NCBI GenBank assembly: GCA_002269645.1
Contig: NIVC01000858.1
Span: 1 to 64,000 of the forward strand
Origin: Macrostomum lignano
Taxonomy: Eukaryota
DNA: 64,000 nt
Direction: 5' to 3'
A model generated the notes under the pieces. That model made no database searches. It had not been told where the DNA came from and saw only the letters and a list, made by a program, of their open reading frames with translations. How positions within the stretch are numbered: the stretch's first letter is position 1; each line of letters begins with the position of its first letter. Below are positions 3,918 through 63,572 of the stretch, piece by piece. Position numbers and translations under genes: made by a program.

Positions 3918-4759
3918 ATTAAAGATTCAATCTGAAGCCTGGCGCCTTTTGTCTGGTTAGATAATTGCTTTTACACGAAAACGTTGACTGACATTAATGG
4001 ATCGATAGACAACGTTCGGAATGTCTATGTACATTAGTTTTACATTATGCACATACCTCACGAGTATATTTTATGAGCATATTTTTAATAAATATTATGC
4101 TTTATCCTTAAAGCATCCGAGCAGAAATTTTACAAAACCTTTTGCAAGAAAAAAATCTAAACGTTGTTTGGCTAGTATTAGTTTTCCGGTGTGCAGTTCG
4201 TCAATTGGACATTGGACACATCAGTCAAAGTTTTGACTTTCGAAAAAATAGAAAAAATAAAAACAGAAGCATTTTGTGGGACATTTATTCACATTCTTCA
4301 CAGCGATGAACCGTTTCCTGAAGTTAGTTTTATACTACCGTAGAAGGCTGCAGATTCAGTTTTTGCCGCAAGTTTTGATTCAAGGATGACGTACGTACTA
4401 AAAAAGGACACGACAATCGCATTTTCAGGAAGGGAGCCACTATTATAAGGCTGGTTTTCGATAAAAAAATACACTAGCAAGAATATAATGCTTGATTGAC
4501 AATTTGATGCAATTATCAGGAAAATATTTTATGATCATCACATGATTGCACACAGCTTTATCTTTTAATTTTGTAGTGGAGCCACAACATGTACAATCAT
4601 GTACAATGTAGTGGCTCCGCTTATTGTAACATGTACAATAAAAATTATTGACTAAAAGTCATCTTCGAAGCTTGCACAAGATGACTTTTAGTCAAATTTT
4701 AGTCGAAATTTTTTATTTGGGGTATTAGAACTACTGTTTGGTGTCTCACTAGTCAGCAG

Positions 4760-17574: not shown

Positions 17575-18990
17575 ATTTCTCACTCGGCAATCCGTCATTT
17601 AGAAAAGCTGTCACTCTAATCAGCCCCTAAAGTTGTCACTCGGCAATACGTCACTTGGGAAAGCTGTCACTCTAATCAGCCCCTAAAGTTGTCACTCGGC
17701 AATCCGTCATTTAGAAAAGCTGTCACTCTAGTCAGCCCCTAAAGTTGTCACTCGGCAATACGTCACTTGGGAAAGCTGTCACTCTAATCAGCCCCTAAAG
17801 TTGTCACTCGGCAATCCGTCATTTAGGAAAGCTGTCACTCTAATCAGCCCCTAAAGTTGTCACTCGGCAATACGTCACTTGGGAAAGCTGTCACTCTAAT
17901 CAGCCCCTAAAGTTGTCACTCGGCAATCCGTCATTTAGGAAAGCTGTCACTCTAATCAGCCCCTAAAGTTGTCACTCGGCAATACGTCACTTGGGAAAGC
18001 TGTCACTCTAATCAGCCCCTAAAGTTGTCACTCGGCAATCCGTCATTTAGGAAAGCTGTCACTCCAATCAGCCCCTAAAGTTGTCACTCGGCAATCCGTC
18101 ATTTAGGAAAGCTGTCACTCTAGTCAGCCCCTAAAGTTGTCACTCGGCAATCCGTCATTTAGGAAAGCTGTCACTCTAGTCAGCCCCTAAAGTTGTCACT
18201 CGGCAATACGTCATTTGGGAAAGCTGTCACTCTAATCAGCCCCTAAAGTTGTCACTCGGCAATCCGTCACTTGGGAAAGCTGTCACTCTAATCAGCCCCT
18301 AAAGTTGTCACTCGGCAATACGTCACTTGGGAAAGCTGTCACTCTAATCAGCCCCTAAAGTTGTCACTCGGCAATCCGTCATTTAGAAAAGCTGTCACTC
18401 TAATCAGCCCCTAAAGTTGTCACTCGGCAATACGTCACTTGGGAAAGCTGTCACTCTAATCAGCCCCTAAAGTTGTCACTCGGCAATCCGTCATTTAGGA
18501 AAGCTGTCACTCCAATCAGCCCCTAAAGTTGTCACTCGGCAATCCGTCACTTGGGAAAGCTGTCACTCCAATCAGCCCCTAAAGTTGTCACTCGGCAATC
18601 CGTCACTTGGGAAAGCTGTCACTCTAGTCAGCCCCTAAAGTTGTCACTCGGCAATCCGTCATTTAGGAAAGCTGTCACTCTAATCAGCCCCTAAAGTTGT
18701 CACTCGGCAATCCGTCATTTAGGAAAGCTGTCACTCTAATCAGCCCCTAAAGTTGTCACCCGGCAATACGTCATTTGGGAAAGCTGTCACTCTAATCAGC
18801 CCCTAAAGTTGTCACTCGGCAATCCGTCATTTAGGAAAGCTGTCACTCTAGTCAGCCCCTAAAGTTGTCACTCGGCAATACGTCACTTGGGAAAGCTGTC
18901 ACTCTAATCAGCCCCTAAAGTTGTCACTCGGCAATCCGTCACTTAGGAAAGCTGTCACTCTAATCAGTCCCTAAAGTTGTCACCCAGCAA
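17575..18990. repeat. 56-bp tandem satellite, ~25 copies, two main variants
   Basis: Unit aaagctgtcactctaatcagcccctaaagttgtcactcggcaat[acgtcacttggg/ccgtcatttagg]; period 56 measured between 17604 and 17660. Confidence 0.96.
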
Positions 18991-19510: not shown

Positions 19511-22500
19511 ATGTCAATCGCTATGGGATTTCCGCCTACCCCGGCCGGCGGCCAGGGCGGCGGCAGCTTCTCTCCGCTGACCATGTTTGAGTGCACCATC
19601 AGCAGCGCCACCATGCTCATTGACAGCATGGCAGTGCGAGACCTGCTCATGGCGTTCAAGATTGTGGCCCAGCTGCACGGCCACCTGCTGGAGGTGCTGG
19701 ACCCCACTGTGCAGCGGCTGGCTACTGTGGCTGATGAGCACAGCCAGGTAAGCTCAATCCAGTGCAGTGTAGATCACCTGTAAACTGTGCCTTGACCACC
19801 GCCTCGGGATTGGCCCAAGATATACTGACCGTGATCCACCCCTATGGAATCACCCCTACACCACCCCTATGGAATCACCCCTGCACCACCCTTATGGAAT
19901 CGCCCCTGCACTATCCCTATGGAATCGCCCCTGCACCACCCTTATGGAATCGCCCCTGCACCACCCTTATGGAATCGCCCCTGCACCACCCTTATGGAAT
20001 CGCCCCTGCACCACCCCTATGGAATCGCCCCTTTGCTATCCCTATGGAATCGCCCCTGTACCACCCCTATGGAATCACCCCTGCGCCACCCCTTTGGAAT
20101 CGCCCAGGCCCAAACAGCAGGAAACCAGCCCATGGGTTCCCTCGCCATCCCTCGCAGTGCCCGCCGCCCGCCTCGCGATCAACAAGCGGCTCTGGCGGCC
20201 TGGCCGGTGTGGCCGCCGCTGCTGCCGCTGCCGCTGCCGCCGGAGCTCCGGGCACGTCGAAGCTGGGCAAGCCGGAGCCGTCCTTCTCCGGTGTCAAGTC
20301 GGAGCCGGGCGCCGATTCCGACGACGACTGCGTCCTGATGGAGGCGGATCTGGTGTACGACGGCTCCGGTGCTGGCGCCGCTGCCTTCGGCCAGAGCCCG
20401 CCCGCCAAGCTGCCCCGTCTCGGCCCAGGCGGCGGTGGCGGCGGCGGCGGCGGCTCCGACCTGTCCGACTCCGGCGAGCTGTCCAACGACTGGAAGGCCA
20501 CGCTGCGCAAGGCCTACCGAGTGCTGAAGGACGAGACTGGCACCAACGTGTTTGACTTCTCCCTGCCCTACTCCGCCCGCGTCAACGTCCTGGCCGCCAA
20601 CCGCGTGATCGACCGAGCGCTCAGCCTCAGCCAATACCAGCCCGCGAACCTGTCCGCCTGGAGAAGTGGGTCTTTCAAGTCATTTCCTGTCATATTCTGT
20701 GTAGGCTACTGCTAGTAGTACGCTTATATCTGGGAGCGGCGGGTTGGCACACTGTTGGCGGTATATTGCCACCATAAAGAGATTATCTAAATTTGGAATT
20801 AAAATCAAACTATTTGAATAATGCATACTGCAAAAATTAAATGCCTTTATTATTGCACTTGTGCCCAATGATCCATTGATCACTACCTTGGCCTGAAGTG
20901 TGCCTCCCCAGCGGTCTCATTGCATATTAGCATGTGATTGTCTGTGCATTATCGAATTTAATTTCACTATAAAACAGACTACAAAAAAGGGCGTTGCAGG
21001 GCCTGATGAGTTGTGCAAATATTTAAAGTTGGTCCGAAATAAAAAAATGCTGCGATATTGGCTGAGCCGTGCAGCTGCCGCGCTGTGGAGCTTTAAAATA
21101 TAACTATAGTAATAATAATAATCGGCCCCGTTGCAAATCGGGGGGTATCGGGGGCCGCCCCCGCTGCACCAATGCTCTCCTTGTATGACAACCTAATCAA
21201 CTAATTATCATAATTTATTAATGCCTATCCAGCGTCGCCGCTTCCCAAAAACCCTCCGCTAAGCAACGGGGGGATTCTCGCTCAGCTGGCAGGGGAATTC
21301 GCGCTTTGCTGGCAGGGGAATTCTCGCTCAGCTGGCAGGGGAATTCTCGCTTTGCTGGCAGGGGAATTCTCGCTCAGCTGGCAGGGGAATTCGCACTCAT
21401 CACCAGAGACTCGCAGCTGGCCATCCGGCGCTGTTTCAGGCGGCTGCAACCGGTACATGTCCGTGTACTTCGGCTGCACGCTGAAGCCCGGCGTCAAGAA
21501 GCTGCACATGGCCTCGCGCTGGAAGAGGCAATTCCTTTTCAGCTTGGTAAGACCTGCGGCCTGCCGACCTCGTCTCCTGTCCCCTGGCAACGCCCTTTGC
21601 ACCTCAGTCTAGGGTAGAAATTGTGTAGCAGCCCTGCAACACTTCGTGGGGTCGGGCTGCTTTGCAGGGCTCTGCTACAGCTACCTGAGCACCTATTTCT
21701 CTTGGACGCTGAAGCCATCGGCCAAGAAGCTCCTTGAGCAGGCGCAGCTGCAGCAGCGGATGGATCGCTTCAAATACCTGGGCTCAGTAAGGCTTAGCTT
21801 TTGGTGACCAGCACTTGCTCCCAGGCCTGGAATGCCCGCAGCGAATCCCCAGCAATTTCTGTGTCCGCTCCGCAATTCAATTGTTTTTGCACTTCCAGTT
21901 GTAGCCGAAAAATACTTTAAAGTGTACTTTAGCGCTGTGCTCAAACGAGATTATAAAGTGCAGCACCAGCAGCGCATCTGCGACAAAGTGTTCCACCGCG
22001 TCCTGGTAGGTGTGCGCAGCTGATCAGCGCCCAGCACCTGCCCGCTACATTAGCCCGATTGGCGAGTGTTTGAAGATGCACAATTCCATGCATATAATGT
22101 GTATTGTTGCAGAGCGGGCGCTGAGTTACTACTCGGGCTATTTCCGCTGCGTATTGCGGCGCGATTATAGGCAGGATTATCTAAAGAATAGCTTCCATCG
22201 AATCTGGGTACGTGTCTGCGCCCCGTGTAGCCAAACCCTACCGTGTCTGGCTCACAAGATGCATACTCAGCAACAGCTAACCACCCCCCCCCCACTCACG
22301 CTGCCACAAGGGCCAAAAGTTTTGCATTCCATCGGTGATTGAGAAAGTTGAGAAACACGAACCCCATCGAGCATGTCTGGCACTTCGTAAAGCGAAGAGT
22401 TCAGCAGCTGGTGTCTGGCAGAATGTGATAATAGTACATTTGATTCTAGACAGGGCAATAGGGGCTCGGAAAATTCGGCGGGTTTTGTGGATAGGAGGCG

Positions 22501-24620
22501 ATGATGAGAGTGGGGTAAGCAGCACGGGTCTGGAATGATAGGGTTTGAGGGGCGATCGATATCAACAATGTGCATAGCATATTGAGTGAAGCGGGGCATT
22601 GGCAGACCAGGCTGTGTCCCTCCATTCTGCCGCCGGCTCTCTGCAACGTCCCAGCCAATTTTTTGTTGCTCCATTGTTTGTTAGGGGGCTGACTGACCCT
22701 GAACTGCCTGTTGTTGCAGGAGGCTGCTCCGCCTACCTTAGCTCCTACTATCGCAGGTACCTAAAGTTTAAATATGTCAGCTCAGAGCGCAGCCAGCAGT
22801 GTCGGCACACGGTGCTCAGTCTTATAGTAAGTTGCGCCTCCCCTGCCAGTTGGGGCTCGGGCGCCTGCAATGCTTCCCCTTGCACTTGGTTGAGAAAATC
22901 ACTGCTAAGAAACTCCTTCCCCGCCCCTGCAGCCCAGTCGCTAAAGTACTTTGGCGGGCATTATCGCAAGAATCTGCAGTGCGCATTTAAGGTCAACAAG
23001 CGGCAGTCGGACACTCGAAGCATTGTTCGGATTAGCCTGGTCAGTTAGTGCGTTTCCTGATTTGTTTGTTAGAGCTGATCGGCCCAGCAACTCTCGGAAA
23101 GGGCAGCTCTCACTGCGCTTGTCTAGGCTAATTCTGTGTTAGCAATTCTTTATAGAGGCCGGATTCAAGTACCTTGGCAGCTGGTTTAATAAGAATCTCA
23201 AGCGGGATTTTAAACAGCAGCAGCAGCAGAGCAAGCTGAACTCAATCTTTCTTGTGCAAACTGTGAGTGCGGACTCGGCTTTGCGCTGTGTTGTGGTGAT
23301 GAATAGCAGTGAGCATTCGCACTGTCTGAGCAGGGGTGGGAGCCTGATTTGTCTGGTTCAGTTGTGTCTGCTGCTAAAGCTATTTTCCTTGTTTAAACTG
23401 CCGAGGGTAAGTCTATTGTGCGACTCTCCCGGCTGCTCTATCCGCGTTCTGCCGAGAACTCTTGGTAACTGGCTTCTAATTTAGTAAATCCCCATCCCAC
23501 CAGCCCGAGAATCCCATCCCATCTACCTGAGAATCCCATCCCATCTCATCTACCTGAGAATCCCCATCCCATCACCCCGAGAATCCCATCTCACCTACCT
23601 GAGAATCCCCATCCCATCAGCCCAGGAATCCCATCTCACCTACCTAAGAGTCCCCATCCCACCAGCCCGAGAATCCCATCCCATCTACCTGAGAATCCCC
23701 ATCCCATCACCCTGAGAATCCCATCTCACCTATTTGAGAAACTCTATCCCATCACCCCGAGAATCCCATCTCACCTACCTGAGAGTCCCCATCCCATCAG
23801 CCCCAGAATCCCATCTCATCCAGCCCCAGAATCCCATCTCATCCAGCCCCAGAATCCCATCTCATCCAGCCCCAGAATTCCATCTCACCTACCTGAGAAT
23901 CCCCATCCCATCAGCCCCAGAATCCCATCTCGTCCAGCCCGAGAATCCCATCTCATCCAGCCCCAGAATCCCATCTCATCCAGCCCCAGAATTCCATCTC
24001 ATCCGGCCCGAGAATCCCATCTCATCCAGCCCCAGAATCCCATCTCGTCCAGGCCGAGAATCCCATCTCATCCGCCCCGAGAATCCCATCTCATCCAGCC
24101 CGAGAATCCCATCTCATCCGCCCCCAGAATCCCATCTCATCCAGCCCCAGAATTCCATCTCATCCGGCCCGAGAATCCCATCTCATCCAGCCCCAGAATC
24201 CCATCTCATCCAGGCCGAGAATCCCATCCTGACCCGCCGGTCCCCCCGCAGAAGCTGAACCGGCGCCAGAAGAGCTACGAGGCCCTGAAGCCCAACCTCG
24301 ACCAGACCGCCCAGACAAAATACGAGAGCGTGCTCAACAGGGACTACACCAGCTCGGATGAAGAAGGCGGTGCCGACTTGGACTCTGAGATGAAGGTGCG
24401 CAGCCTCCCTTGGGAGAGCGCCGAGCTGCGCGAGATGAAGCGTCGATTAGACGAAGTTTTCCTCGAACGCCTCGCCGACGACAAGCAGCGTGCGGACGTT
24501 TTGCGGCTGCAGCGGGACCCAGCTGTGCTGTCCAGCCGCCCGCCTCCCGCCGACCAGCTCGACTGGGCGCGCGACCCAGCCTGGACGGCGTCTCATCCGC
24601 CTGGCGGCGCCACTCAATAA
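19511..24620 (+). CDS. Uncharacterised protein, paralogue 1 (~405 aa), with a seven-exon alternative cassette array
   Basis: Exon 1 19511-19747 (phase 0), exon 2 20158-20665 (ends WR, phase 1), one cassette exon, last exon 24252-24620 (KLNRRQKSYEAL..DYTSSDEE..VRSLPWESAEL..LD). Homologous throughout to the gene at 26248-28423. Confidence 0.85.
19835..20105. repeat. 25-bp minisatellite (caccacccttatggaatcgcccctg)n in intron 1 of paralogue 1
   Basis: Tandem periodicity between the donor at 19748 and the acceptor at 20157. Confidence 0.92.
21278..21395. repeat. Five 23-bp repeats with core ctggcaggggaattc, alternating ctcag/ctttg variants, immediately upstream of the cassette array
   Basis: Cores at 21286, 21309, 21332, 21355 and 21378. 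Confidence 0.92.
21440..21546 (+). CDS. Alternative cassette exon A (107 nt)
   Basis: tttcag|..|gtaaga; phase 1->0; (S)GCNRYMSVYFGCTLKPGVKKLHMASRWKRQFLFSL. Confidence 0.8.
21668..21786 (+). CDS. Alternative cassette exon B (119 nt)
   Basis: ttgcag|..|gtaagg; phase 1->0; (R)LCYSYLSTYFSWTLKPSAKKLLEQAQLQQRMDRFKYLGS. Confidence 0.8.
21899..22005 (+). CDS. Alternative cassette exon C (107 nt)
   Basis: ttccag|..|gtaggt; phase 1->0; (I)VAEKYFKVYFSAVLKRDYKVQHQQRICDKVFHRVL. Confidence 0.8.
22113..22207 (+). CDS. Alternative cassette exon D (95 nt)
   Basis: ttgcag|..|gtacgt; phase 1->0; (K)RALSYYSGYFRCVLRRDYRQDYLKNSFHRIW. Confidence 0.8.
22720..22826 (+). CDS. Alternative cassette exon E (107 nt)
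   Basis: ttgcag|..|gtaagt; phase 1->0; (R)GCSAYLSSYYRRYLKFKYVSSERSQQCRHTVLSLI. Confidence 0.78.
22933..23039 (+). CDS. Alternative cassette exon F (107 nt)
   Basis: ctgcag|..|gtcagt; phase 1->0; (T)QSLKYFGGHYRKNLQCAFKVNKRQSDTRSIVRISL. Confidence 0.78.
23156..23262 (+). CDS. Alternative cassette exon G (107 nt)
   Basis: ttatag|..|gtgagt; phase 1->0; (K)AGFKYLGSWFNKNLKRDFKQQQQQSKLNSIFLVQT. Confidence 0.8.
23488..24232. repeat. ~23-bp minisatellite (agaatcccatctcatccagcccc)n in the last intron of paralogue 1
   Basis: Tandem periodicity; ends ~19 nt before the acceptor at 24251. Confidence 0.93.
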
Positions 24621-25717
24621 CTGAGACGGCGCCAAGGACTGCGGAGAACTGACTTGACTCCTTCCCTACCCCTCCGTATTTTCCCACCTTCCCTATCTCC
24701 TCATTTCCCCATCTTATTTCCCTATCCCCTTATTTCCCCATCTCATTTCCCATCCTTCTTTTTCTCCATCCCCTCATCCCCCATCTTTTCATTTCCCCAT
24801 CCCCTTATTTCCCCATCGCTCTTCATTTCCCCATCCCTTTTTCCTTATCCCCTCATTTGCTCATCTCTCTTCACTTCCCCAACCCCTCATTCCCCTTCTA
24901 ATGTCCTCATCATATTCTCATTTTCTGGCTACTGAAGATGGGGCGCTGCTCCCCCAGCTCATACAAATTCCATTGGCGGCTCTCCCCATTAAAATGCGCT
25001 GGCAGGATTGAGAAAATCGGTTGACTGGTCTGGATGTTTGTCCAGAGGACTTATTCCTAGCCAAGCTTGACTGTTTCCTTTGGCAAACTGATTTAACGAG
25101 ACCAACTCAAAATTGAGAGTGCAGCGCCCTTCACTGCAGTAGAACCGGACCCCTCACACCCCGTATGGTCGAATCCCTATTCGCGAGTTGAGTATTGTAT
25201 AATGTCAAGTCGCTCATTGCTGTGAACTGACTGCTTTTTAACACTGCCACAAGCCCCCTAATTGTTTGCATTTTCCTCCCATTGTTCAACTGTAATTCTC
25301 CCCCAATGGTTGTCCGGCACATCCGCAACCTTTGGGTTCCGCTTGATCGCCCGGAGTCCGGGCGCATTTTCGCTTCTGTAATTCGCTTCCGCCCTGCCTG
25401 GCGGCTGATGTTCGTCTTTGCTTATTATAAATGATTACTGCTATGTATTTCATTACTGTCACTTTTCTGCTATTGACTATGCTGTGCTGTTGTGTTCTCA
25501 ATCAGTTCTCAAATATACGGCCAGTCTATCATCTTAGCACCTGTATTTACTCACCCGGTCACACTGCTCTGCTCTGTGACCACCGACTTGACAGTAAAGC
25601 AAGGATATGAATTTGTTGCAGAATTCCTCAGCAGTAAGTAGGCTTAATACTACTTATTAATCCCTAGATAGCAGTCAGAGTCCAGAACCGATTCATGGCC
25701 AGTTTAAGCAACGCAAA

Positions 25718-26087
25718 ACTGCTCAGTCACTGAAGTTCGTTGGTTTTGTCTATGACCAACTGCTCAGTCACTGAAGTTCGTTGGTTTTGTCTATGACCAA
25801 CTGCTCAGTCACTGAAGTTCGTTGGTTTTGTCTATGACCAACTGCTCAGTCACTGAAGTTCGTTGGTTTTGTCTATGACCAACTGCTCAGTCACTGAAGT
25901 TCGTTGGTTTTGTCTATGACCAACTGCTCAGTCACTGAAGTTCGTTGGTTTTGTCTATGACCAACTGCTCAGTCACTGAAGTTCGTTGGTTTTGTCTATA
26001 ACCAACTGCTCAGTCACTGAGGTTCGTTGGTTTAGTCTATGACCAACTGCTCAGTCACTGAGGTTCGTTGGTTTTGTCTATGACCAA
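25718..26087. repeat. 41-bp tandem repeat, ~9 copies
   Basis: Unit ctgctcagtcactgaagttcgttggttttgtctatgaccaa; copies near-identical. Confidence 0.95.
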
Positions 26088-26247
26088 ATCTGACTCGTCT
26101 TAGCAAATTCCGCCAGTAATTCGCACTCAATATGCCCATGAGTAAAAGTCGGCCAGTAGAACTAGATGCATTTTTGCATTGCGTGGATTTGTAGTCACAG
26201 CTGTGTTGAAAACCATTTTTCATGCAGACCGACTAGTTTGCCCAGCA

Positions 26248-28423
26248 ATGGCCGCCGCCGTCCTTCAGCACCAGCAGCAGCAGCAGCCGGCTTTCTCTAC
26301 GCTGACCCTGTTCGAGTCCACCCTGATGAACGCGGGCATGCTGCTGGACAGCATGACTCTGGACGACCTGTGCGCCGCGCTGCGCCTCATCAACAACCTG
26401 CACCTGCAGCTGGTGGACATCATGCAGCCCTCGGCCGCCGATGTGCAGCTCCGGCTCGTCCGCGCGAGCACCGACTGGCCGAGGCGGCGCCGCTGCCGCT
26501 GCCTGTGCAGCAGCCGTCTGCGCAGGAGTCGGAGCCGCAGATCCCAGCAGATCGGAAGCGGCCTCTGCAACATTCTGCTGAGGAATTCCGCGAGTCCAAG
26601 GTTCGTTTGGCTGATACTAACGGCGAGGCTGGCGGCGGCGGCTGCGGCATTCTCGTCCACCAAGTCAACTCCGCCGACAACTTCAACGAGGCAGCCGACG
26701 ACGAAGCGGCGCTCGTTGACGATTCGGAGTCTGCCGCGCAACTAACTGCCGGCTGTCCATCAATCTTGAGCTGCAGCGGCGGAGAATTTTCCAGCTCTGC
26801 CAACAACTGCTGGAGCGGCAACGTTCGGGTGAGCCTGCTGGCCTGGCTAGTCTGAGCACTCTGGTCTGTGCCTGGGCACTCGTTAGTGTCTGAGCACTCT
26901 AGTCTGTGTCTGGGCACTCGTTAGTGTCTGAGCACTCTAGTCATTGTCTGGGCACTCGTTAGTGTCTGAGCACTCTAGTATGTGCCTGGGCACTCAGTGT
27001 CTGAGCACTGTAGTCTGTCTGGGCACTCGTTAGTGTCTGAGCACTCTAGTCTGTGCCTGGGCACTCGTTAGTGTCTGAGCACTCTAGTCTGTGCCTGGGC
27101 ACTCAGTGTCTGAGCACTGTAGTCTGTCTGGGCACTCGTTAGTGTCTGAGCACTCTAGTCATTGTCTGGGCACTCGTTAGTGTCTGAGCACTGTAGTCTG
27201 TGTCTGGGCACTCGTTAGTGTCTGAGCACTCTAGTCTGTGTCTGGGCACTTGTTAGTGTCTGAGCACTCTAGTCTGTGTCTGTGCACTCGTTAGTCTGTG
27301 CACTCATTAGTGTCTGAGCACTCTAGTCTGTGTCTGGGCACTCTAGTTTGAGAGTTTCAGTTGAATGAAATCAAGCAGAAGCAGAAATTTGCCCACAGAA
27401 CATACTGCAAGATGCTTACAAGAAGCTCCGAGGCAGCGGTCCTCACTTGTTCGACTTCTCCAAGAGGTAGGGTGCGCGCCTAGTTGGCTACTCAATCAGT
27501 GCTCACTCAGCCACCTCCCCAAGCCCTGCAAGCCGCTTTCCCTTGCCGCCCTCAGCTGGGAGCACTCGATCAATCAGGACGCGGCTCGCAGCGTCTTGGA
27601 CTTGGTGAGGGATGAATCTGGCATCGAGGCCGACGAGGACACCTGGAAAAGTGAGTCTTTAGCCAGTCTTTATTGCTGCATTGCTTGCGCGACTCTCGAG
27701 TCAGTCATAGTCAAACCGGAATGCCGCCCGCAGAGCTGTACCAGTACTACCTGCGGGAGAGCAAGCGGGTCCAGTGCAACAGGCGGACTGCTGCCCGCTG
27801 CAACCGGATGAAGGCGGTGAGGCTTTTTGGAATACAGATTCTCATTTGTGTCCTTAACCGTGGTGCTAGCCAGAATTAGCCCCCATTAACTGAGTAAAAA
27901 TCGCCCCCCCCCCCTACACCAATTGAGAATCGCCCGTGCACCTAGCAAGAATCGCCCCGTACACCTAGTGAAAATCGCCCCGTACACCTAGCGAGAATCG
28001 CCCCGTACACCTAGTGAGAATCGCCCCGTACACCTAGTGAGAATCACCCCGTACACCTAGTGAGAATCGCCAATCCCCATCGCATCGCAGAAGCTCGGCC
28101 GGCGCCAGAAGGCATTCGAGTCTCTGCTGCCGCACCTGTCCCCAGACGAGCTCAACCAGTTCCGCGCCGTGCTGTCCCGGGATTTCACCTCCTCAGACGA
28201 GGAAGACGAGACCGCCTCAGGCAGCGGTGAGGCCGAGGACGAGCAGGCGAATCTGCGGGTGCGCAGCCTGGTGTGGGAATCCGCCGCCGTCGCCGACATC
28301 AAGCGCCGCCTGGATGACACCTTCTATGCCCGCTTCGCCACCGTCAAGCAGCGCGCCCAGCTCGCCCGCTGCCAGCGTTTCGACGGCGCTGAAAGCAACG
28401 GGGGCAGCCCCGGGAGCTCCTGA
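26248..28423 (+). CDS. Uncharacterised protein, paralogue 2 (single exon at the cassette position); apparent 1-nt frameshift in exon 1
   Basis: Exons 26248-26828, 27399-27466 (NILQDAYKKLRGSGPHLFDFSK), 27556-27650 (SWEHSINQ..DEDTWK, phase 1), 27734-27816 (LYQYYLRESKRVQCNRRTAARCNRMKA, phase 1->0) and 28091-28423 (KLGRRQKAF..DFTSSDEE..VRSLVWESAAV..LD). The N-terminal FSTLTLFESTL..MLLDSM matches FSPLTMFECTI..MLIDSM of paralogue 1. Confidence 0.8.
26848..27348. repeat. ~38-bp minisatellite in intron 1 of paralogue 2
   Basis: Unit ctagtctgtgtctgggcactcgttagtgtctgagcact. Confidence 0.92.
27898..28075. repeat. 23-bp minisatellite (cgccccgtacacctagtgagaat)n in the last intron of paralogue 2
   Basis: Tandem periodicity; ends just before the acceptor at 28090. 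Confidence 0.88.
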
Positions 28424-28459
28424 CTGGGCCGTCCGCTCCGACCCCACCAGCTCCGCGTT

Positions 28460-29790
28460 TTGAGTCTCCCCCTCCATCTGAGTCTCCCCTCATTTGAGTC
28501 TCCCCCTCCCATCTGAGTCTCCCCTCCCATCTGAGTCTCCCCTCATCTGAGTCTCCCCCTCCCGTCTGAGTCTCCCCCCTCCCATCTGAGTCTCCCCCTC
28601 CAGTCTGAGTCTCCCCCTCCCATCTGAGTCTCCCCCTCCCGTCTGAGTCTCCCCTCCAGTCTGAGTCTCCCCCTCCAGTCTGAGTCTCCCCTCCCATCTG
28701 AGTCTCCCCCTCCCATCTGAGTCTCCCCCTCCAGTCTGAGTCTCCCCCCTCCCATCTGAGTCTCCCCCTCCCGTCTGAGTCTCCGGTGTCTCCCCCTCCC
28801 ATCTGAGTCTCCCCCTCCCGTCTGAGTCTCCTCCCTCCCATCTGAGTCTCCCCCTCCCATCTGAGTCTCCCCTCATCTGAGTCTCCCCCCTCCCATCTGA
28901 GTCTCCCCCTCCCATCTGAGTCTCCCCCTCCCATCTGAGTCTCCCCCTCCAGTCTGAGTCTCCCCCTCCAGTCTGAGTCTCCCCCTCCCATCTGAGTCTC
29001 CCCCTCCCATCTGAGTCTCCCCTCCAGTCTGAGTCTCCCCCTCCCATCTGAGTCTCCCCCTCCCGTCTGAGTCTCCGGTGTCTCCCCTCCCATCTGAGTC
29101 TCCCCCTCCCGTCTGAGTCTCCTCCCTCCCATCTGAGTCTCCCCCTCCCATCTGAGTCTCCCCTCATCTGAGTCTCCCCCCTCCCATCTGAGTCTCCCCC
29201 TCCCATCTGAGTCTCCCCTCATCTGAGTCTCCCCCCTCCCATCTGAGTCTCCCCCTCCAGTCTGAGTTTCCCCCTCCAGTCTGAGTCTCCCCCCTCCCAT
29301 CTGAGTCTCCCCTCCAGTCTGAGTTTCCCCCTCCAGTCTGAGTCTCCCCCTCCCATCTGAGTCTCCCCCTCCCATCTGAGTCTCCCCCTCCCATCTGAGT
29401 CTCCCCCTCCCATCTGAGTCTCCCCCTCCCGTCTGAGTCTCCCCCCTCCCATCTGAGTCTCCCCCTCCCATCTGAGTCTCCCCTCCCATCTGAGTCTCCC
29501 CTCCAGTCTGAGTCTCCCCCTCCCATCTGAGTCTCCGCCTCCCATCTGAGTCTCCCCCCTCCCATCTGAGTCTCCCCCTCCCGTCTGAGTCTCCCTATCC
29601 GAGTCTCCCCTTCCCGTCTGAATCTCTCCCCCCTGCAGTCTGAGTCTCCCCCTCCCATCTGAGTCTCCCCTCCCATCTGAGTCTCCCCCCTCCCATCCGA
29701 GTCTCATCCCCCTACGTCTGAGTCTCCGCCTCCCATCTGAGTCTCCCCCCTCCCGTCTGAGTCTCCCCCCGTCTGAATCTCTCCCCATTC
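28460..29790. repeat. 19-20-bp C-rich minisatellite (ctcccatctgagtctccccc)n
   Basis: Tandem periodicity; gives the GGDSDGRGRLRWEGETQ-type spurious ORFs. Confidence 0.96.
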
Positions 29791-46306: not shown

Positions 46307-46781
46307 GACTAAACAGAATTTCACTGCCTACCCAGTCAGCAGTAACTCCGGCTGGAGATGTCAAAAAAAATTTTGTGCCTTGCGTTGAGAAACTTTATAC
46401 AGAGTTGGCTGCTGGGTCGGTTGCGCACATTGGTACAAATAATGTCTCAACGATGCGCACTGCAGCTGTCACATCGAGTCACAGAGTGCTGTGTGCGCTG
46501 GACAAAAACTGAAGTTCCCTTTTTTCACAGCATACATTGTCACTGAGAGCATTGCCATGAACTTAATTCCCGCAAATCATTTCTCTACCTTATGTAGTCA
46601 GAGCAAGATGCAAATGAGCCAACTTGCTCTGAGCAGGAGTTCTGACTCTCTCTCAGCACAATGATCAAGCCGTTTAAGTTCGGAATGGCTCACTGTGCCC
46701 GCCGCTCGAGAGTTCTGAATCTGAGTTGGGGTGGCGCACGGCAAACCATGTTTTTAAAGCACAATTGCTAAGACTCTTTTT

Positions 46782-47452
46782 TGTTAGATAAGCTTTGCGT
46801 CAAAAGAAGCTGAGGTAGGAAGACGGCAGGAGTAGTCTCCTAACACTAACACTTGAGCCCAAAGTGCGTCTTATGAAGCAAGATTAAAGTGCTGAGGAGG
46901 CTCTGGAAGATTTTAGGAGCGCAAAAGTTAGTAGTGACCGAGCTGTGACTCTAAGAATGAACTCTGAGAGTCAGGAGTGAGTTGGACGGCATCAAGAGTA
47001 GCTCTGCGAGTCAGGAGGGGTGGGTTTCACAAACGCGAAATTTCACAACCGCTAAAATTTTTGCACTTACTTTCATATACAACACTCTTTTTAGCGGTTG
47101 TGAAGTTTTGCGTTTGTGAAGTTTAGTGCTTATGAAAGTAGGTGATTTAGCGGTTGTGAAGTTTCGCGTTTGTGAAGTTTAGTGCTTATGAAAGTAGGTG
47201 ATTTAGCGGTTGTGAAGTTTCGCGTTTGTGAAGTTTAGTGCTTTTGAAAGTAGGTGATTTAGCGGTTGTGAAGTTTCGCGCTTATGAAAGTGACTGCAAT
47301 TTTTTAGCGGTTATGAAGTTTCGCGGTTGTGAAAGTAGGTGATTTAGCGGTTGTGAAATTCGCGTTTGTGAAAGCAACCCGTCAGGAGTGAGTTGGACAG
47401 CATCAAGAGAAACTCTGACAGTGTCTTTCACAGAAATAAATCTAGGACTACA
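46782..47452 (+). mobile_element. Candidate LTR (TG...CA), interrupted by a MITE; second copy 55245-55915
   Basis: Starts tgttag, ends ctaca, with AATAAA near the 3' end. It begins where homology to the paralogous intergenic block (42870) stops and lies upstream of BEL gag. No PBS or matching 3' LTR found. Confidence 0.45.
47018..47380. mobile_element. Non-autonomous DNA transposon (MITE) with ~40-bp imperfect TIRs, internal tandem repeats and 8-bp TSD; second copy 55481-55843
   Basis: Left gggtgggtttcacaaacgcgaaatttcacaaccgctaaa versus the reverse complement of the right end gggttgctttcacaaacgcgaatttcacaaccgctaaa. TSD gtcaggag at 47010-47017 and 47381-47388. Confidence 0.8.
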
Positions 47453-47764
47453 TAGAAGAAAGCCGCCGCAGCCGCAGTCTTCCCCGAGGAGGTCTGCTCG
47501 AAGATGACTCTGCACAGTCCGCCACAGAAGCCTTCCACGCCGTCCGTGGGAACAGCAATCAGCGCGGCCGGGACGGAAATCAGCAACCGCCTTTCGACCT
47601 CAGTGGCTCGTTGCCAGCTGCTTCATCCAGAGCAATGGCTCCTCCTGCTGCTCAGGCCGCTGCACCGATCTCTGCCGCCTCTCCTGCTACACCTGACGTT
47701 GAAGTCAACGCCCTTCTCGCCTCCATGACCGCGATGATGCAGCAGAACCAGCAACTCATGCAAC

Positions 47765-50041
47765 GGGCCCCAAGAGGGGCGTCTCCGGATCCCGTCCGGG
47801 GACGGGCATTGGGTCCGCGTTCTCGCCGCGCCCCCGAACGCTCTCTGAGTGACGAAGTGACCCACCCTACCCAGATCCCGCGGAGCAGTGATCAACCCTA
47901 CGGCGTCCCGGCCTCGGCCATGGACTCCACCGTTTCTCCCGAGGAGGACAACCTCCATCAGATCCTCTTGTCCTCCTCGACTTCAAGAGGGCGTACAACC
48001 GCGTCTGGATCAGAGCCTTGTGCATCAAAATGAGGGACCTGGGGGTCCCCCACGTTTCGTGCTCTGGATCCACCGCTTCCTGAGCGACCGCCGCGCCGAG
48101 GTCAAATGGGTCAACAGGACCAGCCGTGAACGGGTTTTCGAGGACGGCCTCCCGCAGGGCAGTGTCCTGGCCCCCTCCTCTGGCTCATCTTCGCTAACGA
48201 CCTCCCGGCTGCCATCAGGGCCGTTAGCCCAGAATGCGGCATCAATCTGTATGCAGACGACAGCAGCCTCCTCGCCACCAACCGCCGCCTATCCGCGTGT
48301 GCTCGCATCATCCAACCAGCCCTCGATGCCACAGCGGCCTGGTGCGCCCGCTGGAAAGTCCTCCTCAGTTATGACAAATGCGAGTATTCGACCTTCACCC
48401 TTTGCCCGTACGAAACGAACGGCAAGGTCCGCCTCCGGCTCGAAATTAACGGCCACGATATCGCCTTCAACCAATACCCTCGCCTGCCCGGCGTCACCAT
48501 TGACGGCCAGCTCAACTTCGCCAAACAGGGCTCGGAGGTCCGCCGGAGGATGGCTCAACGCCGCAGCGCCCTCAACGCCCTTGCCCATCGCAGCACGGGC
48601 GCTGACGCCAGAGTCCTGCGAACTGCCTACATTGCCACCATCCGGGCCTGTGCCGACTACGGCAGTGCTATTTGGTTTAACGTGGCTGCGCCGAGCACCC
48701 GTCGCGGCATTGCGAGTCAGCAGGCGATCTGTGCGCGGCTGATCACTGGTTGCTGCAGCACGACGCCTAATCACCTGTCTCTCCGCCTTGCGAATCTCCC
48801 CCCGATAGCTTCCGTTGCCGTGGAACGCGCCGCCAATCTCTTCGAGCGCATCGTCAGGCTTTCCCCTGAGTGCCCGGCTCACGGCACTGCGATGCGCACG
48901 ACCCGTCCACGCCTCAAAAATAGGAGTTTCGAAGAAGCCCCTGCGCCCGACGACACCCACCTCGAGCTCGACCGAGCAAGACCCTTCCGCGGCTGCTGGC
49001 GCCGCGCCACTTCGGAGCTCCCGGTCTGCGCCTTCACGCTCAGAGAATCTGACCGCGAGACCCCGCCTCGCCTCGCTCCCTGGCTCGACTTCTGCCAGAC
49101 CCGCGTCAGCTTCGACCTCCAGGCCTGTAGTGTCCGCAGGGACGCCCCCGCCGAGGTTCGGGCAGCCGCCGCCGAGGCCGGCATCGCGCGAGCCCGCGAG
49201 TGCTCTGTCATCGCCTGGACGGACGGCTCCGCTGAGAAGGGTACCAGCAACGGGGCGGCGCCGCCGTCATCGAGTTCAGGGACGGTCGCCCCGCGTCACC
49301 GTCCGCGCCGCGGCCGGTGCCCTGTGCAGCAGCTTTCAGGCCGAACTCGTCGCGATCCAGACCGCCCTGTCCTACTGCCTCCGTGAGGGGCCGGCCCCGC
49401 CCCCCAGCATGGCGGTTCTCACTGACAGCCTCAGCGCTCTGACCGCCCTGGAGCAGGGGCCCGCCCGCCAGTCCACCGCTACCGGAGCGACCTGCTGGCA
49501 GCTCATCGCCGGCTCCTCCGGCCGCACTGATTTCCGTTTCTGTTGGGTCCCCGGACACGCCGGCATCGACGGCAACACCGCCGCGGACCTTGCGGCCGCC
49601 GAAGCCGCCACTCTCGCGCAAGCGCACGTGCCTATCAGCACTACCTCGGCCCGCGCCGCCATCCGCCGCGATCGCCGCGTCCTCGACGCCCGTATTCTCG
49701 GCCTTCCTATTCACCATACCCATTCCTTCCGCAATCGCCGGGAGTTTGTCACTTTCAACCAACTCCGGGCCGATGTCAGCACCCTGTGCGGTTCCACCTG
49801 ACACCGCCTCGGCATGCAAGACGACGAGGCCTGCCCGGACTGTGGCGCCCCGGACACGGTGGACCACGTCCTCCGCCGCTGCCCCCGCGGAGATGCGCCG
49901 CGGCTCCGCATCTTCGGCGGCGACGACGCCCTGGACGGCCCCGCCGGAAGGTTATTCGCGTTGCTCCGCGGGATGGGGCGATGGCCCCCGCCTATATTAG
50001 CGCCGCAGCGCTAACGGCGCGCTGGGAATAAGAAAGAAAGA
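47765..50041 (+). mobile_element. Ingi/I-group-like non-LTR retrotransposon (RT + RNase H + Cys knuckle), internally deleted; second copy ~56228-58504
   Basis: LDFKRAYNRVW, GLPQGSVLAP, LYADD, GVTIDGQLNF; RNase H WTDGS..AELVAI..TDSLS..WVPGHAGIDGNTAAD; CPDCGAPDTVDHVLRRCP; (GAAA)n tail; 12-bp TSD aactcatgcaac at 47753-47764 and 50042-50053. Confidence 0.9.
47774..47864 (+). ncRNA. HDV-like (CPEB3-type) self-cleaving ribozyme at the 5' end of the LINE; second copy ~56237-56326
   Basis: Hand fold: P1 ggggc/gcccc, P2 tgggtc/gaccca, P3 gcg/cgc, L3 ttctcgc, P4 cgctc/gagtg, J4/2 acgaa. The core GCG-UUCUCGC-CGC-GCCCC...CGAA closely mirrors the CPEB3 ribozyme core as recalled. The outer end of P1 is imperfect. 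Confidence 0.65.
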
Positions 50042-53000: not shown

Positions 53001-53477
53001 GCCAGCCGGCTGCCACCGCCGGCCCGTCTGCCGGCCAGTCCGCTGGCACCTCTGGCCTGTCTGCCTGTGTCCGCCGTGCGCTCCACCGCCAGAAGATTCG
53101 TGACCTTATCTTTGAGTCTTGACTAACACTTCTCACTCTCCCCTTTCTGGCCGCCGCCCCATCCTGTCAGATTTATCCACATGAACTGACAATTAATCAT
53201 ATCATTTCCATTCTTCTCTGTGCAATTTGCGTTTGGTGTGGCTCCCAATTGGGCCGTTTTACTTTGTGCTTGTTGTGTGCGTATTTAGAACGGCTCGTAC
53301 AGTATAATACTCGTATTTGCACGATCGATAATTTAGGCCTCTCCGTGCGCTTGGCGCACGAAGAGGTCCAGTTTTATTACGTTTGAATATAGCCTGATCT
53401 CTCTCTTCCGACTTTTTGCGATTGTTTAAAACTTTCACTGCCCGCCTGTTGCTACGCTCGTAAATATAGCTTCGTAA

Positions 53478-54017
53478 GTGTTAGTCATTCCGTCTCCGTT
53501 ATTTGTCCCACCAGCAATTGGACACGCGTATATCGGCGGCTGGCTGCTCTCTCGTCTGCTGCAAAGCGGCTCTTGTGCAACATGCACGGCTGAGCTCTTG
53601 GAAACTCAAAATGCAAGTCCAGGAATGCTCTTTCTAGAACTAAAAAACATCAGTATTTCTGGTGGCGGTCTTCGCTTTCCCAGCTTAATACTCGTACAAG
53701 CAGTACTACGGATGGAACAAGCCCTTAGCAATTGCTGCATTGTACAGGACAGAATCAGAGCGAGGCATGGAATAGCTATCAGCTCTTGCGTGCAGCCAGT
53801 CGTTAAAGCGGCAGCTGCCTCAGTTCTGAAATTACACAGTGATGAGCACACTGAGGAATGGCTGACCCGCCTATCGCTCTTATTCACACGCATGAGAGTG
53901 CACCACTGGCGCAAGGCGCAGCAGACGATCTTGCGCTCCTCCAAAAAGCGGAGCGCTTCCGGTTTTTGCTCAGCTTCTGGCGACCAGCGCAAGCTGCGTC
54001 GTCTAAGTGCAACCTGA
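53478..54017 (+). mobile_element. P-element/THAP9-like transposase C-terminal remnant; second copy 61940-62479
   Basis: AYIGGWLL..CATC..L..LELK..GGLRFPS..RMRVHH resembles the C-terminal region of P-superfamily transposases. No catalytic N-terminal part or TIRs seen. Confidence 0.55.
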
Positions 54018-63000: not shown

Positions 63001-63451
63001 TTGCGATGAGCGAAGGGAAGGAAGATCGCTGGAGCACCAAAAATCAGGCCTCACTGTTTTGTCTATGGCACAACCTCCTGCTAGCTTAGCAACTCATTTA
63101 GCAGTTCACTCATGAAACCAAACTTCAGAAACAGCTCAACAGCAGCTGCTAAGCGATCATGAAATCGGTCCCAGGGTTCGATTCCTAGCTCCAAGCTCAA
63201 GGGCCAGTTGACACTCCTAAATCAGTCAAGAGCTGCTTTTTGGAATAATTTGTGTCTGGAAGACATCTCATCACAAACGGCAGGGAGTATTAGTACATTT
63301 CGAGTTTATTAAGGTACAGAGATGGCCAAAATTGACTGTTCGACATTGACAATGCCTTAGCAAAAATAATGGCTCAGCAGATCTATTGGCATTTTTATAA
63401 GCTTATTGACAGTGACTCCGAGTGGTTCGAGCCCTGAGTTCCAGTCATTGC

Positions 63452-63572
63452 ACGCTGTCACATCAGCAGTAAATGTGCTCTCGGCCGCCGCCACAGCTCC
63501 AAAGCCCAAGGTGTCACCATCCAGGTGGCTCCGTCATTGAAGAAAGAAGCCGAGAGCCAAAAAGCTGTCGGC
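63452..63572 (-). pseudogene. Degenerate fragment of a fourth hairpin/coiled-coil paralogue
   Basis: ggccgccgccacagctcca, ccaggtggctccg and gaagccgagagcca match the hairpin-coding region of copy 3 (45655-45770), with indels. Confidence 0.6.

What the first reader, a model, noticed from the sequence alone, without database searches (positions are those of the whole stretch)
21440..23262. The swapped exon encodes one amphipathic helix plus a basic tail: a possible specificity switch for DNA or partner binding
Seen: the constant exons give ..LRKAYRVLK..VFDFS..N..VID..W(R/K) before the cassette and KLNRRQK..SSDEE..VRSLPWES..LD after it. The cassette supplies YxxxYFxxxLK(R) followed by a K/R/Q-rich stretch that runs into the basic KLxRR. 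Conserved positions are hydrophobic (core-facing) while the intervening, probably exposed positions vary freely. Inference: this is the pattern expected if a recognition helix of a small helical nucleic-acid-binding domain (Myb/SANT- or BEN-like) is exchanged. The conserved N-terminal helical block shared with paralogue 2 could be a dimerisation module, allowing isoform combinations.
Basis: inference. Interest (0 to 1): 0.72.

Follow-up and report, generated by a model that had tools for sequence, protein, structure and literature searches.

The report
Seven swappable exons in a basic helix
A flatworm (Macrostomum lignano) gene carries seven interchangeable exons that each encode the middle of one long, positively charged helix in a conserved animal protein of unknown function, so the exon swap is real but the proposed Myb/SANT- or BEN-like DNA-reading fold is not supported.

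Summary
Window 21440-23262 (+) contains seven tandem exons of 95-119 nt. All have AG/GT splice sites and all are 2 mod 3 in length. Each encodes xxxxKYΦxx(Y/W)(F/Y)xxxLK(R), then a basic, sequence-variable stretch of net charge +5 to +7. Only single inclusion keeps the reading frame. The gene is Macrostomum lignano BOX15_Mlig034464g3.

The protein is not lineage-specific. A profile search finds 364 representatives in cnidarians, spiralians, echinoderms, hemichordates and amphioxus. All are "uncharacterized" and none has a Pfam match. In Lingula and Patiria the same segment is a single exon with identical phases, so Macrostomum duplicated an ancient exon. Three paralogous loci also carry arrays, with cassette types shared across loci.

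AlphaFold2 (pLDDT 92.7, pTM 0.79) places the whole cassette inside one 56-residue helix. Its first third is amphipathic. The rest is basic and has no hydrophobic face. Foldseek against PDB and BFVD, and Pfam scans of 49 members, give no Myb/SANT/MADF/BEN or any other known fold.

Verdict: a genuine mutually exclusive exon array that swaps the probably exposed basic part of a spine helix. It plausibly acts as a specificity switch, but the binding partner is unknown.

The parts
19511..19747 (+). Exon 1 (ATG to CAG|gtaagc). It encodes the N-terminal block FSPLTMFECTISSATMLIDSMAVRDLLMAFKIVAQLHGHLLEVLDP, which is shared by all Macrostomum paralogues.
   Evidence: 100% tblastn match to P0001 residues 1-79. 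Block conserved in alignment A2. The equivalent block of P0004 is predicted as a helix-turn-long-helix (H32-49, H52-88, pLDDT 83-91).
20158..20665 (+). Exon 2. A low-complexity linker, then the start of the conserved domain (ELSNDWKATLRKAYRVLKDETGTNVFDFSLPYSARVNVLAANRVID..SAWR). The donor is in phase 1.
   Evidence: Helices 1 and 2 of the AF2 model.
21440..21546 (+). Cassette 1 (107 nt; SGCNRYMSVYFGCTLKPGVKKLHMASRWKRQFLFSL; 'LKP' type).
   Evidence: AG/GT sites, length 2 mod 3, in frame with both constant exons. Used in UniRef model P0002.
21668..21786 (+). Cassette 2 (119 nt; 40 aa; 'LKP' type).
   Evidence: Reciprocal best match to cassette L002:8841 of a paralogous gene (normalised score 0.35).
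21899..22005 (+). Cassette 3 (107 nt).
22113..22207 (+). Cassette 4 (95 nt; 32 aa, the shortest).
22720..22826 (+). Cassette 5 (107 nt).
22933..23039 (+). Cassette 6 (107 nt).
   Evidence: Reciprocal best match to L003:9790 (normalised score 0.59).
23156..23262 (+). Cassette 7 (107 nt). This is the one used in the NCBI gene model P0001.
   Evidence: Reciprocal best match to L002:10396 (0.48).
24252..24620 (+). Last exon (phase 0): KLNRRQK..SSDEE..VRSLPWES..LD..SSRPPP..DWA, ending in stop TAA.
   Evidence: Contains the family-wide invariant or near-invariant residues S134, S135, W154, S194, R196, P199 and W205.
27734..27816 (+). The single cassette-equivalent exon of paralogue 2 (83 nt, 2 mod 3; KLYQYYLRESKRVQCNRRTAARCNRMKA). 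The gene spans about 26227-28460 and corresponds to P0021.

Best explanation
The region is a tandem array of seven mutually exclusive exons in a Macrostomum lignano gene.

Shown:
- The gene belongs to an uncharacterised family found across eumetazoans.
- The array arose by repeated tandem duplication of one ancient exon. That exon is single, with the same phases, in a brachiopod and a starfish.
- Every cassette is 2 mod 3 and sits between a phase-1 donor and a phase-0 acceptor. Only transcripts with exactly one cassette encode the full protein. Skipping all cassettes, or including two, shifts the frame.

Predicted with high confidence:
- The cassette supplies the middle 32-40 residues of one 56-60-residue alpha-helix, which is the spine of a roughly 215-residue alpha/beta domain.

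Inferred:
- The first third or so of the cassette (K-Y-Φ-x-x-Y/W-F/Y-x-x-x-L-K/R) is an amphipathic anchor. It keeps the helix packed against helices 1-2 in every isoform.
- The remaining two thirds or so is solvent-exposed. It stays strongly basic (+5 to +7) but differs in sequence, in length (±4 residues, about one turn) and in the presence of a proline.
- Exon choice therefore keeps the scaffold and changes one charged surface, and possibly the spacing or rotation between the two lobes. That would alter which polyanionic ligand (nucleic acid) or protein partner is bound.
- The N-terminal helical hairpin shared by the paralogues may mediate oligomerisation.
For: - Gene model and frames.
- Identity with BOX15_Mlig034464g3 using cassette 7; paralogue model pairs that share their constant parts but carry a different cassette: P0004 vs P0008 (both spliced on to the KLNRRQK exon) and P0003 vs P0010 (P0010 runs off after its cassette).
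- Arrays in the paralogous loci (L001 at least 8 cassettes, L002 3, L003 at least 3).
- Cassette types are more similar across loci than within an array (0.35-0.59 against at most 0.28), so the array predates the gene duplications and each type has been conserved.
- Family breadth and absence of annotation.
- Same exon boundaries and phases in Lingula and Patiria.
- AF2 model (pLDDT 92.7, pTM 0.79) with the cassette (residues 65-100) inside helix 60-115.
- A second model, of a paralogue with a 40-aa LKP-type cassette, gives a 60-residue helix.
- Hydrophobic periodicity is significant for residues 60-78 and 98-128 and absent for 76-100, where 38-44% of residues are K/R/H.
- Net charge is +5 to +8 in all 21 cassettes examined (+5 to +7 in the seven of this gene).
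- Outside flatworms this exon is highly conserved (Y70, F71, R80, H88, R93, R94, R97).
Against: - No binding assay or ligand is known for any family member.
- No known nucleic-acid-binding fold or Pfam domain is detected.
- Model coordinates could not be inspected, so exposure of residues 76-100 is inferred from sequence periodicity only.
- Several Macrostomum cassettes have a hydrophobic cluster at their 3' end (IFLV, IVRISL, VLSLI) that might be buried.
- The basic residues are not confined to one helical face (p = 0.17-0.47). That also fits a plain charged spacer or a nuclear localisation signal.
- Direct transcript evidence was seen here only for cassettes 7 and 1 of this gene. Spliced isoforms 2-6 are absent from the protein databases searched.
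Confidence: 0.55

Rival explanations
1. The cassette is the recognition helix of a small Myb/SANT-, MADF- or BEN-like helical DNA-binding domain, and swapping it changes the DNA sequence that is read.
For: - The family consensus A.K.YF.SLRD..RR superficially resembles the KW.NLRD.Y.R third helix of MADF/Myb-SANT-like domains. This resemblance is recalled from memory and is a lead only.
- The segment is basic.
Against: - No Myb, SANT, MADF or BEN Pfam hit in the query or in 49 plus 10 family members, even at E<=10.
- Foldseek of two confident models finds no PDB or BFVD hit at E<1.
- The cassette is the middle of a 56-60-residue helix, not a 10-15-residue recognition helix in a three-helix bundle.
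Confidence: 0.07
2. The cassette is a structural spacer or localisation module with no ligand specificity. Isoforms would differ only in helix length or kink (32, 36 or 40 residues; proline in the LKP types) or in nuclear-localisation strength. That would tune geometry or compartment rather than what is bound.
For: - Lengths differ by exactly four residues, and the predicted helix grows from 56 to 60 residues with the longer cassette.
- A conserved LKP subtype occurs across loci.
- Net charge is held constant while sequence drifts, and basic residues are spread all round the helix.
Against: - Cassette types are conserved between paralogues at many non-basic, non-anchor positions. Examples are YFGGHY..KNL..DT..IVR.SL in type 6, and W7 against L2c. 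That argues for constraint on specific side chains.
- Outside flatworms the segment has invariant H88 and fixed arginines.
Confidence: 0.25
3. Most of the cassettes are unused duplicates (pseudo-exons). The gene makes essentially one protein, and the array is a neutral relic of tandem duplication.
For: - Only cassette 7 (P0001) and cassette 1 (P0002, a read-through model) appear in database proteins for this gene.
- The locus is rich in tandem repeats and transposon debris.
Against: - All seven keep open frames, AG/GT sites, the same phase and the anchor motif.
- Arrays persist in three other paralogous loci, with orthologous cassette types as conserved as the constant domain (about 47-59% identity by manual count, against about 54%).
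- Independent gene models of paralogues use different cassettes.
Confidence: 0.1

Closest known systems
Tandem mutually exclusive exon clusters produced by exon duplication (for example the Drosophila clusters catalogued by Hatje & Kollmar, Kassiopeia, PMC3923563).
   Same: The exons are neighbouring, of similar length, homologous, with conserved splice sites and the same reading frame. Those are the four stated prediction criteria, and all are met. One-of-N choice is enforced by frame.
   Different: The host is a flatworm gene of an unannotated protein family. No convincing docking-site/selector RNA pairing was found. Six of the eight introns of the array (five of the six between cassettes) are short (106-121 nt).
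TCF3/E2A E12 and E47 isoforms (mutually exclusive exons giving different DNA-binding and dimerisation domains; PMC6795145).
   Same: It works alike in principle. A mutually exclusive exon replaces a basic helical segment of an otherwise constant protein. In TCF3 this changes DNA binding and dimerisation.
   Different: TCF3 has two exons and a defined bHLH fold with known DNA targets. Here there are seven exons, no bHLH or bZIP signature and no known ligand.
The uncharacterised eumetazoan protein family to which this gene belongs. Examples are Lingula LOC106158935, Patiria LOC119721312, Acanthaster LOC110985748, Branchiostoma Hypp8856, Ptychodera, Owenia, Gigantopelta and Actinia LOC116294229.
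   Same: The roughly 215-residue domain is the same: ECxxxVRxxYxxL..F.F..N..V; A.K.YF.SLRD..R...H..RR..R; KL.RR; YMSSDE; LPWES..K..LD; S.RP.P...P.WA. Intron positions and phases around the cassette-equivalent exon are also the same.
   Different: In the two non-flatworm genes examined (Lingula, Patiria) this exon is single, and across the non-flatworm members the segment is highly conserved. Macrostomum array genes have 3 to at least 8 diversified copies. Macrostomum proteins also have their own N-terminal helical block, where other members have unrelated N-terminal regions that look coiled-coil-like (a Pfam leucine-zipper hit in one, P0053).
Myb/SANT/MADF and BEN DNA-binding domains.
   Same: Only a loose motif resemblance (aromatic-x-S/N-L-R-D followed by basic residues) and a helical character.
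   Different: No sequence-profile or structural match. The helix length and the domain architecture are different.

Membership tests
Mutually exclusive exon cluster (criteria in PMC3923563) | Neighbouring exons of similar length | tested here: met
   Lengths are 107, 119, 107, 95, 107, 107 and 107 nt within 1.8 kb.
Mutually exclusive exon cluster (criteria in PMC3923563) | Sequence homology between the exons | tested here: met
   Shared KY..(Y/W)(F/Y)...LK motif; 17-33% pairwise identity to cassette 1. The regex hits all seven and only one other site in six frames of 64 kb.
Mutually exclusive exon cluster (criteria in PMC3923563) | Conserved splice sites and the same reading frame | tested here: met
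   All cassettes are AG...GT and all are 2 mod 3. Single inclusion gives 402-410 aa ORFs. Skipping, or double or triple inclusion, gives premature stops.
Mutually exclusive exon cluster (criteria in PMC3923563) | Transcripts contain exactly one exon of the cluster | tested here: inconclusive
   P0001 uses cassette 7. Paralogue models P0004 and P0008 each use one, different, cassette and splice on to the KLNRRQK exon; P0003 and P0010 also carry different cassettes, but P0010 ends after its cassette. P0002 is a read-through model and P0006 looks like a skip-all model. No RNA-seq data were available.
Docking-site/selector RNA pairing type of MXE control (Dscam-like) | One docking sequence complementary to a selector next to each variable exon | tested here: inconclusive
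   Inverted 23-nt tandem repeats flank the array at 70-76% complementarity. In the duplex-energy test only intron 5-6 exceeded shuffles (z = -3.2) and the others did not.
Myb/SANT/MADF DNA-binding domain | Significant match to the family's sequence profiles | tested here: not met
   No such Pfam family for the query or for 49 plus 10 relatives at E up to 10 or 0.1.
Myb/SANT/MADF DNA-binding domain | Compact three-helix bundle with a short recognition helix | tested here: not met
   In the AF2 model the cassette lies within a 56-60-residue helix. Foldseek against PDB gives no hit at E<1.
BEN domain | Match to the BEN profile or fold | tested here: not met
   No Pfam BEN hit and no structural hit.
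bZIP/bHLH basic-helix transcription factors | Basic region contiguous with a leucine zipper or HLH, recognised by profiles | tested here: not met
   No bZIP or HLH Pfam hit. One distant relative (P0053) has an N-terminal leucine-zipper-like HALZ hit at threshold, separate from the basic helix.
Uncharacterised eumetazoan family (no Pfam entry) | Full-length match to the roughly 215-residue domain profile with its invariant N38, S134-S135, W154, S194, R196, P199 and W205 | tested here: met
   The profile search returns 364 representatives at E<=1e-3 and 26 at E<=1e-30. Invariant columns are listed. The query is the first row of the alignment.
Any nucleic-acid-binding protein | Demonstrated binding to DNA or RNA | not testable with these tools
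   Needs EMSA, SELEX or CLIP. Only the basic composition (38-44% K/R/H in residues 76-108) argues for it.

The most novel reading that the evidence does not exclude
The domain may be a previously unrecognised eumetazoan nucleic-acid- or polyanion-binding fold whose ligand-contacting element is the exposed basic spine helix. On this reading Macrostomum has turned that element into a combinatorial recognition system. There would be 3 to at least 8 alternative helices per gene across several paralogous genes, each paired in tandem with a single-cassette partner gene. The products would assemble through the shared N-terminal helical hairpin into many homo- and heterodimers with distinct specificities.
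Probability: 0.2. Interest if true: 0.75.

Novelty: new member of a known kind. Interest (0 to 1): 0.5.

Why it matters
Clusters of seven mutually exclusive exons are rare outside arthropods, and none appears to be described for this flatworm model.

The array also highlights a protein family present from sea anemones to amphioxus. That family has a very confident predicted fold, no Pfam entry, no detectable PDB relative and no known function.

The array acts as a natural mutagenesis experiment. It marks which residues of the spine helix must stay fixed (the aromatic anchor and the net positive charge) and which can vary. That makes the function of the whole family directly testable by comparing isoforms in a tractable laboratory animal.

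Tried and rejected
1. Pfam scans of the full isoform, of Macrostomum paralogues, of 10 distant relatives and of all 49 aligned members gave only scattered sub-threshold hits with no recurring family.

2. PDB sequence-profile searches with A3 and A4 returned only noise: NusA at E = 0.12 and designed helical repeats at E about 0.03.

3. Foldseek of both models against PDB, and of the domain model against BFVD, gave nothing at E<1.

4. A second word-indexed homologue search with the broad alignment added little.

I used the paralogue isoform P0004, which has the same LKP / 40-aa cassette type.

6. A Dscam-like docking/selector hypothesis for the inverted 23-nt repeats flanking the array was tested. 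The first script timed out. The rerun showed only one intron above shuffles, so I do not claim it.

7. A one-sided basic stripe on the helix was rejected, because the basic residues are not significantly periodic.

8. A transposon origin for the family was considered. The Lingula and Patiria genes are multi-exon and sit among ordinary genes, so I set it aside.

9. Literature searches for the locus tags and for flatworm mutually exclusive exons found nothing relevant.

10. The UniRef names attached to Macrostomum hits (Exo70, DUF4211, Ras-GEF, PPPDE, BACK) disagree with one another and have no Pfam support. I treated them as uninformative.
Full report
**What is there**

The window is Macrostomum lignano genomic DNA. 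A spliced model built from the + strand is 100% identical to NCBI protein BOX15_Mlig034464g3 (P0001, 406 aa) when cassette 7 is used. The model consists of:
- exon 1, 19511-19747;
- exon 2, 20158-20665;
- one cassette;
- the last exon, 24252-24620.

Between exon 2 and the last exon lie seven exons at 21440-21546, 21668-21786, 21899-22005, 22113-22207, 22720-22826, 22933-23039 and 23156-23262. Each has an AG acceptor with a pyrimidine-rich run and a GT donor. Lengths are 107, 119, 107, 95, 107, 107 and 107 nt, all 2 mod 3.

Exon 2 ends in phase 1 and the last exon starts in phase 0, so any single cassette restores the frame and gives ORFs of 402-410 aa. Skipping all cassettes gives a stop 37 codons into the last exon. 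Every pairwise or triple combination gives a stop within 36-68 codons.

The four published prediction criteria for mutually exclusive exons are therefore all met (PMC3923563). They are similar length, homology, conserved splice sites and the same frame.

The motif is not chance. A regex for it hits the seven cassettes and only one other place in the six-frame translation of 64 kb.

**The cassette pattern**

Aligned with five cassettes from paralogues, Y6 is invariant, L15 is nearly invariant and positions 10/11 are aromatic. All 21 cassettes examined carry net charge +5 to +8, with 6-9 K+R and 0-3 D+E. Otherwise they vary freely.

**The array is old and maintained**

Three other Macrostomum loci encoding paralogues that are 44-55% identical also carry arrays:
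- L001 has at least 8 cassette-like exons.
- L002 has 3.
- L003 has at least 3.

Cassette types are more alike across loci than within an array:

| Comparison | Normalised score |
|---|---|
| W6 vs L003:9790 | 0.59 |
| W7 vs L002:10396 | 0.48 |
| W2 vs L002:8841 | 0.35 |
| Best pair within an array | at most 0.28 |

Diversification therefore preceded the gene duplications, and each type has since been conserved about as well as the constant domain.

Independent gene models of the same paralogue use different cassettes: P0004 vs P0008, and P0003 vs P0010.

The second paralogue in the window (about 26227-28460, P0021) has a single cassette-equivalent exon at 27734-27816. In all four loci the array gene is followed on the same strand by such a single-cassette paralogue.

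**The family is not flatworm-specific**

A profile of the C-terminal 220 residues, searched against 1.84 billion representatives, returned 364 proteins at E<=1e-3. Named members come from:
- Lingula, Owenia, Gigantopelta, Potamilus and Mizuhopecten;
- Patiria, Acanthaster and Apostichopus;
- Ptychodera and Glandiceps;
- three Branchiostoma taxa;
- the sea anemone Actinia.

All are called 'uncharacterized' or 'hypothetical'. None has a Pfam domain.

The shared domain reads ECxxxVRxxYxxL..F.F..N..V...W/I..A.K.YF.SLRD..R...H..RR..R | KL.RR..AL...VL..YMSSDE(acidic)..V..LPWES..K..LD...S.RP.P...P.WA.

In Lingula and Patiria the segment A.K.YF...R is a separate single exon. It has the same boundaries and phases as the Macrostomum cassettes: a phase-1 upstream donor, a phase-0 downstream acceptor, and 110 nt in Lingula. 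Those genes are multi-exon and sit among ordinary genes.

Outside flatworms this exon is among the best-conserved parts of the protein (Y70, F71, R80, H88, R93, R94, R97). Within Macrostomum it is the most variable part.

**Structure**

AlphaFold2 on a 49-sequence alignment, with the cassette-7 isoform as target, gave mean pLDDT 92.7 and pTM 0.79. All five models scored 90.8 or higher. The predicted elements are:
- helices 5-22, 36-52, 60-115 and 118-127;
- a strand at 147-151;
- helices 157-174 and 177-184;
- a strand at 186-193;
- a short C-terminal helix.

The cassette is residues 65-100, entirely inside the 56-residue helix, where block-mean pLDDT is 92-97.

The window's own isoform 2 could not be submitted. 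I therefore modelled paralogue isoform P0004, which carries a 40-residue LKP-type cassette. The domain was reproduced (pLDDT 87-98) with a 60-residue helix that DSSP does not break at the proline. The model also shows the N-terminal block as a helix-turn-long-helix (residues 32-49 and 52-88, pLDDT 83-91), followed by an 80-residue disordered linker.

Hydrophobic residues show significant alpha-helical periodicity in residues 60-78 (p 0.001-0.005) and in 98-128 (p about 0.01), with phases about 90° apart. In residues 76-100 hydrophobic content is low (0.14-0.25) and aperiodic. In residues 76-108, 38-44% of residues are K/R/H, spread around the helix rather than on one face.

I therefore read the cassette in two parts. 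Its first third or so is a buried anchor. The remaining two thirds or so is an exposed basic rod joining two lobes that pack on different faces. Exposure is an inference, because I could not inspect the coordinates.

No support was found for any known fold:
- Foldseek of the domain model against 350,542 PDB chains gave a best E of 2.9.
- Against BFVD the best E was 1.8.
- The full-length paralogue model against PDB gave a best E of 1.9.
- PDB sequence profiles gave only noise.
- No Myb, SANT, MADF, BEN, bZIP or HLH family appears among Pfam hits for 49 members, even at E<=10.

The Myb/SANT/BEN recognition-helix idea is not supported. A loose resemblance of YF.SLRD..RR to the third helix of MADF domains is only a recollection, and it failed both tests.

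**How it most likely works**

Shown:
- One-of-seven exon choice is enforced by reading frame.
- The exon is ancient, and both the array and its cassette types are conserved.

Predicted:
- The cassette forms the middle of a spine helix.

Inferred:
- Exon choice keeps the hydrophobic anchor and the positive charge.
- It changes the exposed side chains, the helix length (32, 36 or 40 residues, about one turn per step, roughly 6 Å and 40° between the lobes) and a possible proline kink.
- This would alter which polyanion or protein is bound, or the geometry of binding.

The invariant SS(D/E)E acidic loop that follows is less confidently modelled (pLDDT about 75). It could fold back on the basic rod, and CK2-type phosphorylation is a guess from the motif alone.

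TCF3 E12/E47 is the closest functional analogue. There, mutually exclusive exons give different DNA-binding and dimerisation domains (PMC6795145). The resemblance concerns how it works, not membership.

The rivals are a pure spacer or localisation role, and unused pseudo-exons. The decisive tests are RNA-seq junction counts and per-isoform binding assays.

**Novelty and score**

The splicing architecture is a new member of a known kind. The protein family is unannotated and its predicted fold has no detectable relative. I found no literature on either.

The functional claim that motivated the finding remains an inference, and its specific fold assignment fails. I score interest at 0.5.

Noticed in passing
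window 22208-22719 (about 22357-22404): The intron between cassettes 4 and 5 is 512 nt, against 106-121 nt for the other introns between cassettes. It contains a Tc1/mariner transposase fragment (NPIEHVWHFVKRRVQQ).
   Followed up: partly
window 21269-21399 and 23491-24228; also 19836-20105 and 27910-28071: Related 23-25-nt tandem repeats lie in introns of both paralogues. The copy just upstream of cassette 1 is inverted relative to the 32-copy array downstream of cassette 7, at 70-76% complementarity, so the two could pair in the pre-mRNA and loop out the whole cluster. Duplex energies were not clearly better than shuffles, except for a 14-nt match in intron 5-6 (22839-22852).
   Followed up: partly
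window 46523-54991 and 54986-63453: An 8,470-bp tandem duplication at 99.94% identity. It carries long ORFs with a reverse-transcriptase-like motif (LYADDSS), so it is probably a retroelement.
   Followed up: no
window 19511-28460; L001, L002, L003: In all four Macrostomum loci the array-bearing gene is followed on the same strand by a single-cassette paralogue: P0001->P0021, P0003->P0030, P0004->P0023 and P0005->P0020. This is a conserved tandem gene pair sharing the N-terminal block.
   Followed up: partly
P0006 (BOX15_Mlig023559g2), compared with window 20665|24252: This annotated paralogue protein ends ..AWRKAEPSPEKLRGNQGQPG. That is the frame-shifted reading of the KLNRRQK exon, so it is a model that skips every cassette. 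It may reflect a real truncated product or an annotation artefact.
   Followed up: no
window 18000-18990, 25717-26087, 26850-27347, 28461-29769: Further satellites surround the two genes: 56 nt x17.7 copies, 41 nt x9, 38 nt x13 (inside an intron of paralogue 2) and 19 nt x68.
   Followed up: no
window 4084-4137 (+): An isolated cassette-like ORF (FNKYYALSLKHPSRNFTK; tblastn E = 0.003 to a paralogue cassette), with no other family motifs nearby.
   Followed up: no
L004 14101-14210 (Lingula); L005 16370-16486 (Patiria): The cassette-equivalent exon is single in both genes but has the same phase-1/phase-0 boundaries as in Macrostomum. The intron positions are therefore at least as old as the protostome-deuterostome ancestor.
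   Followed up: yes
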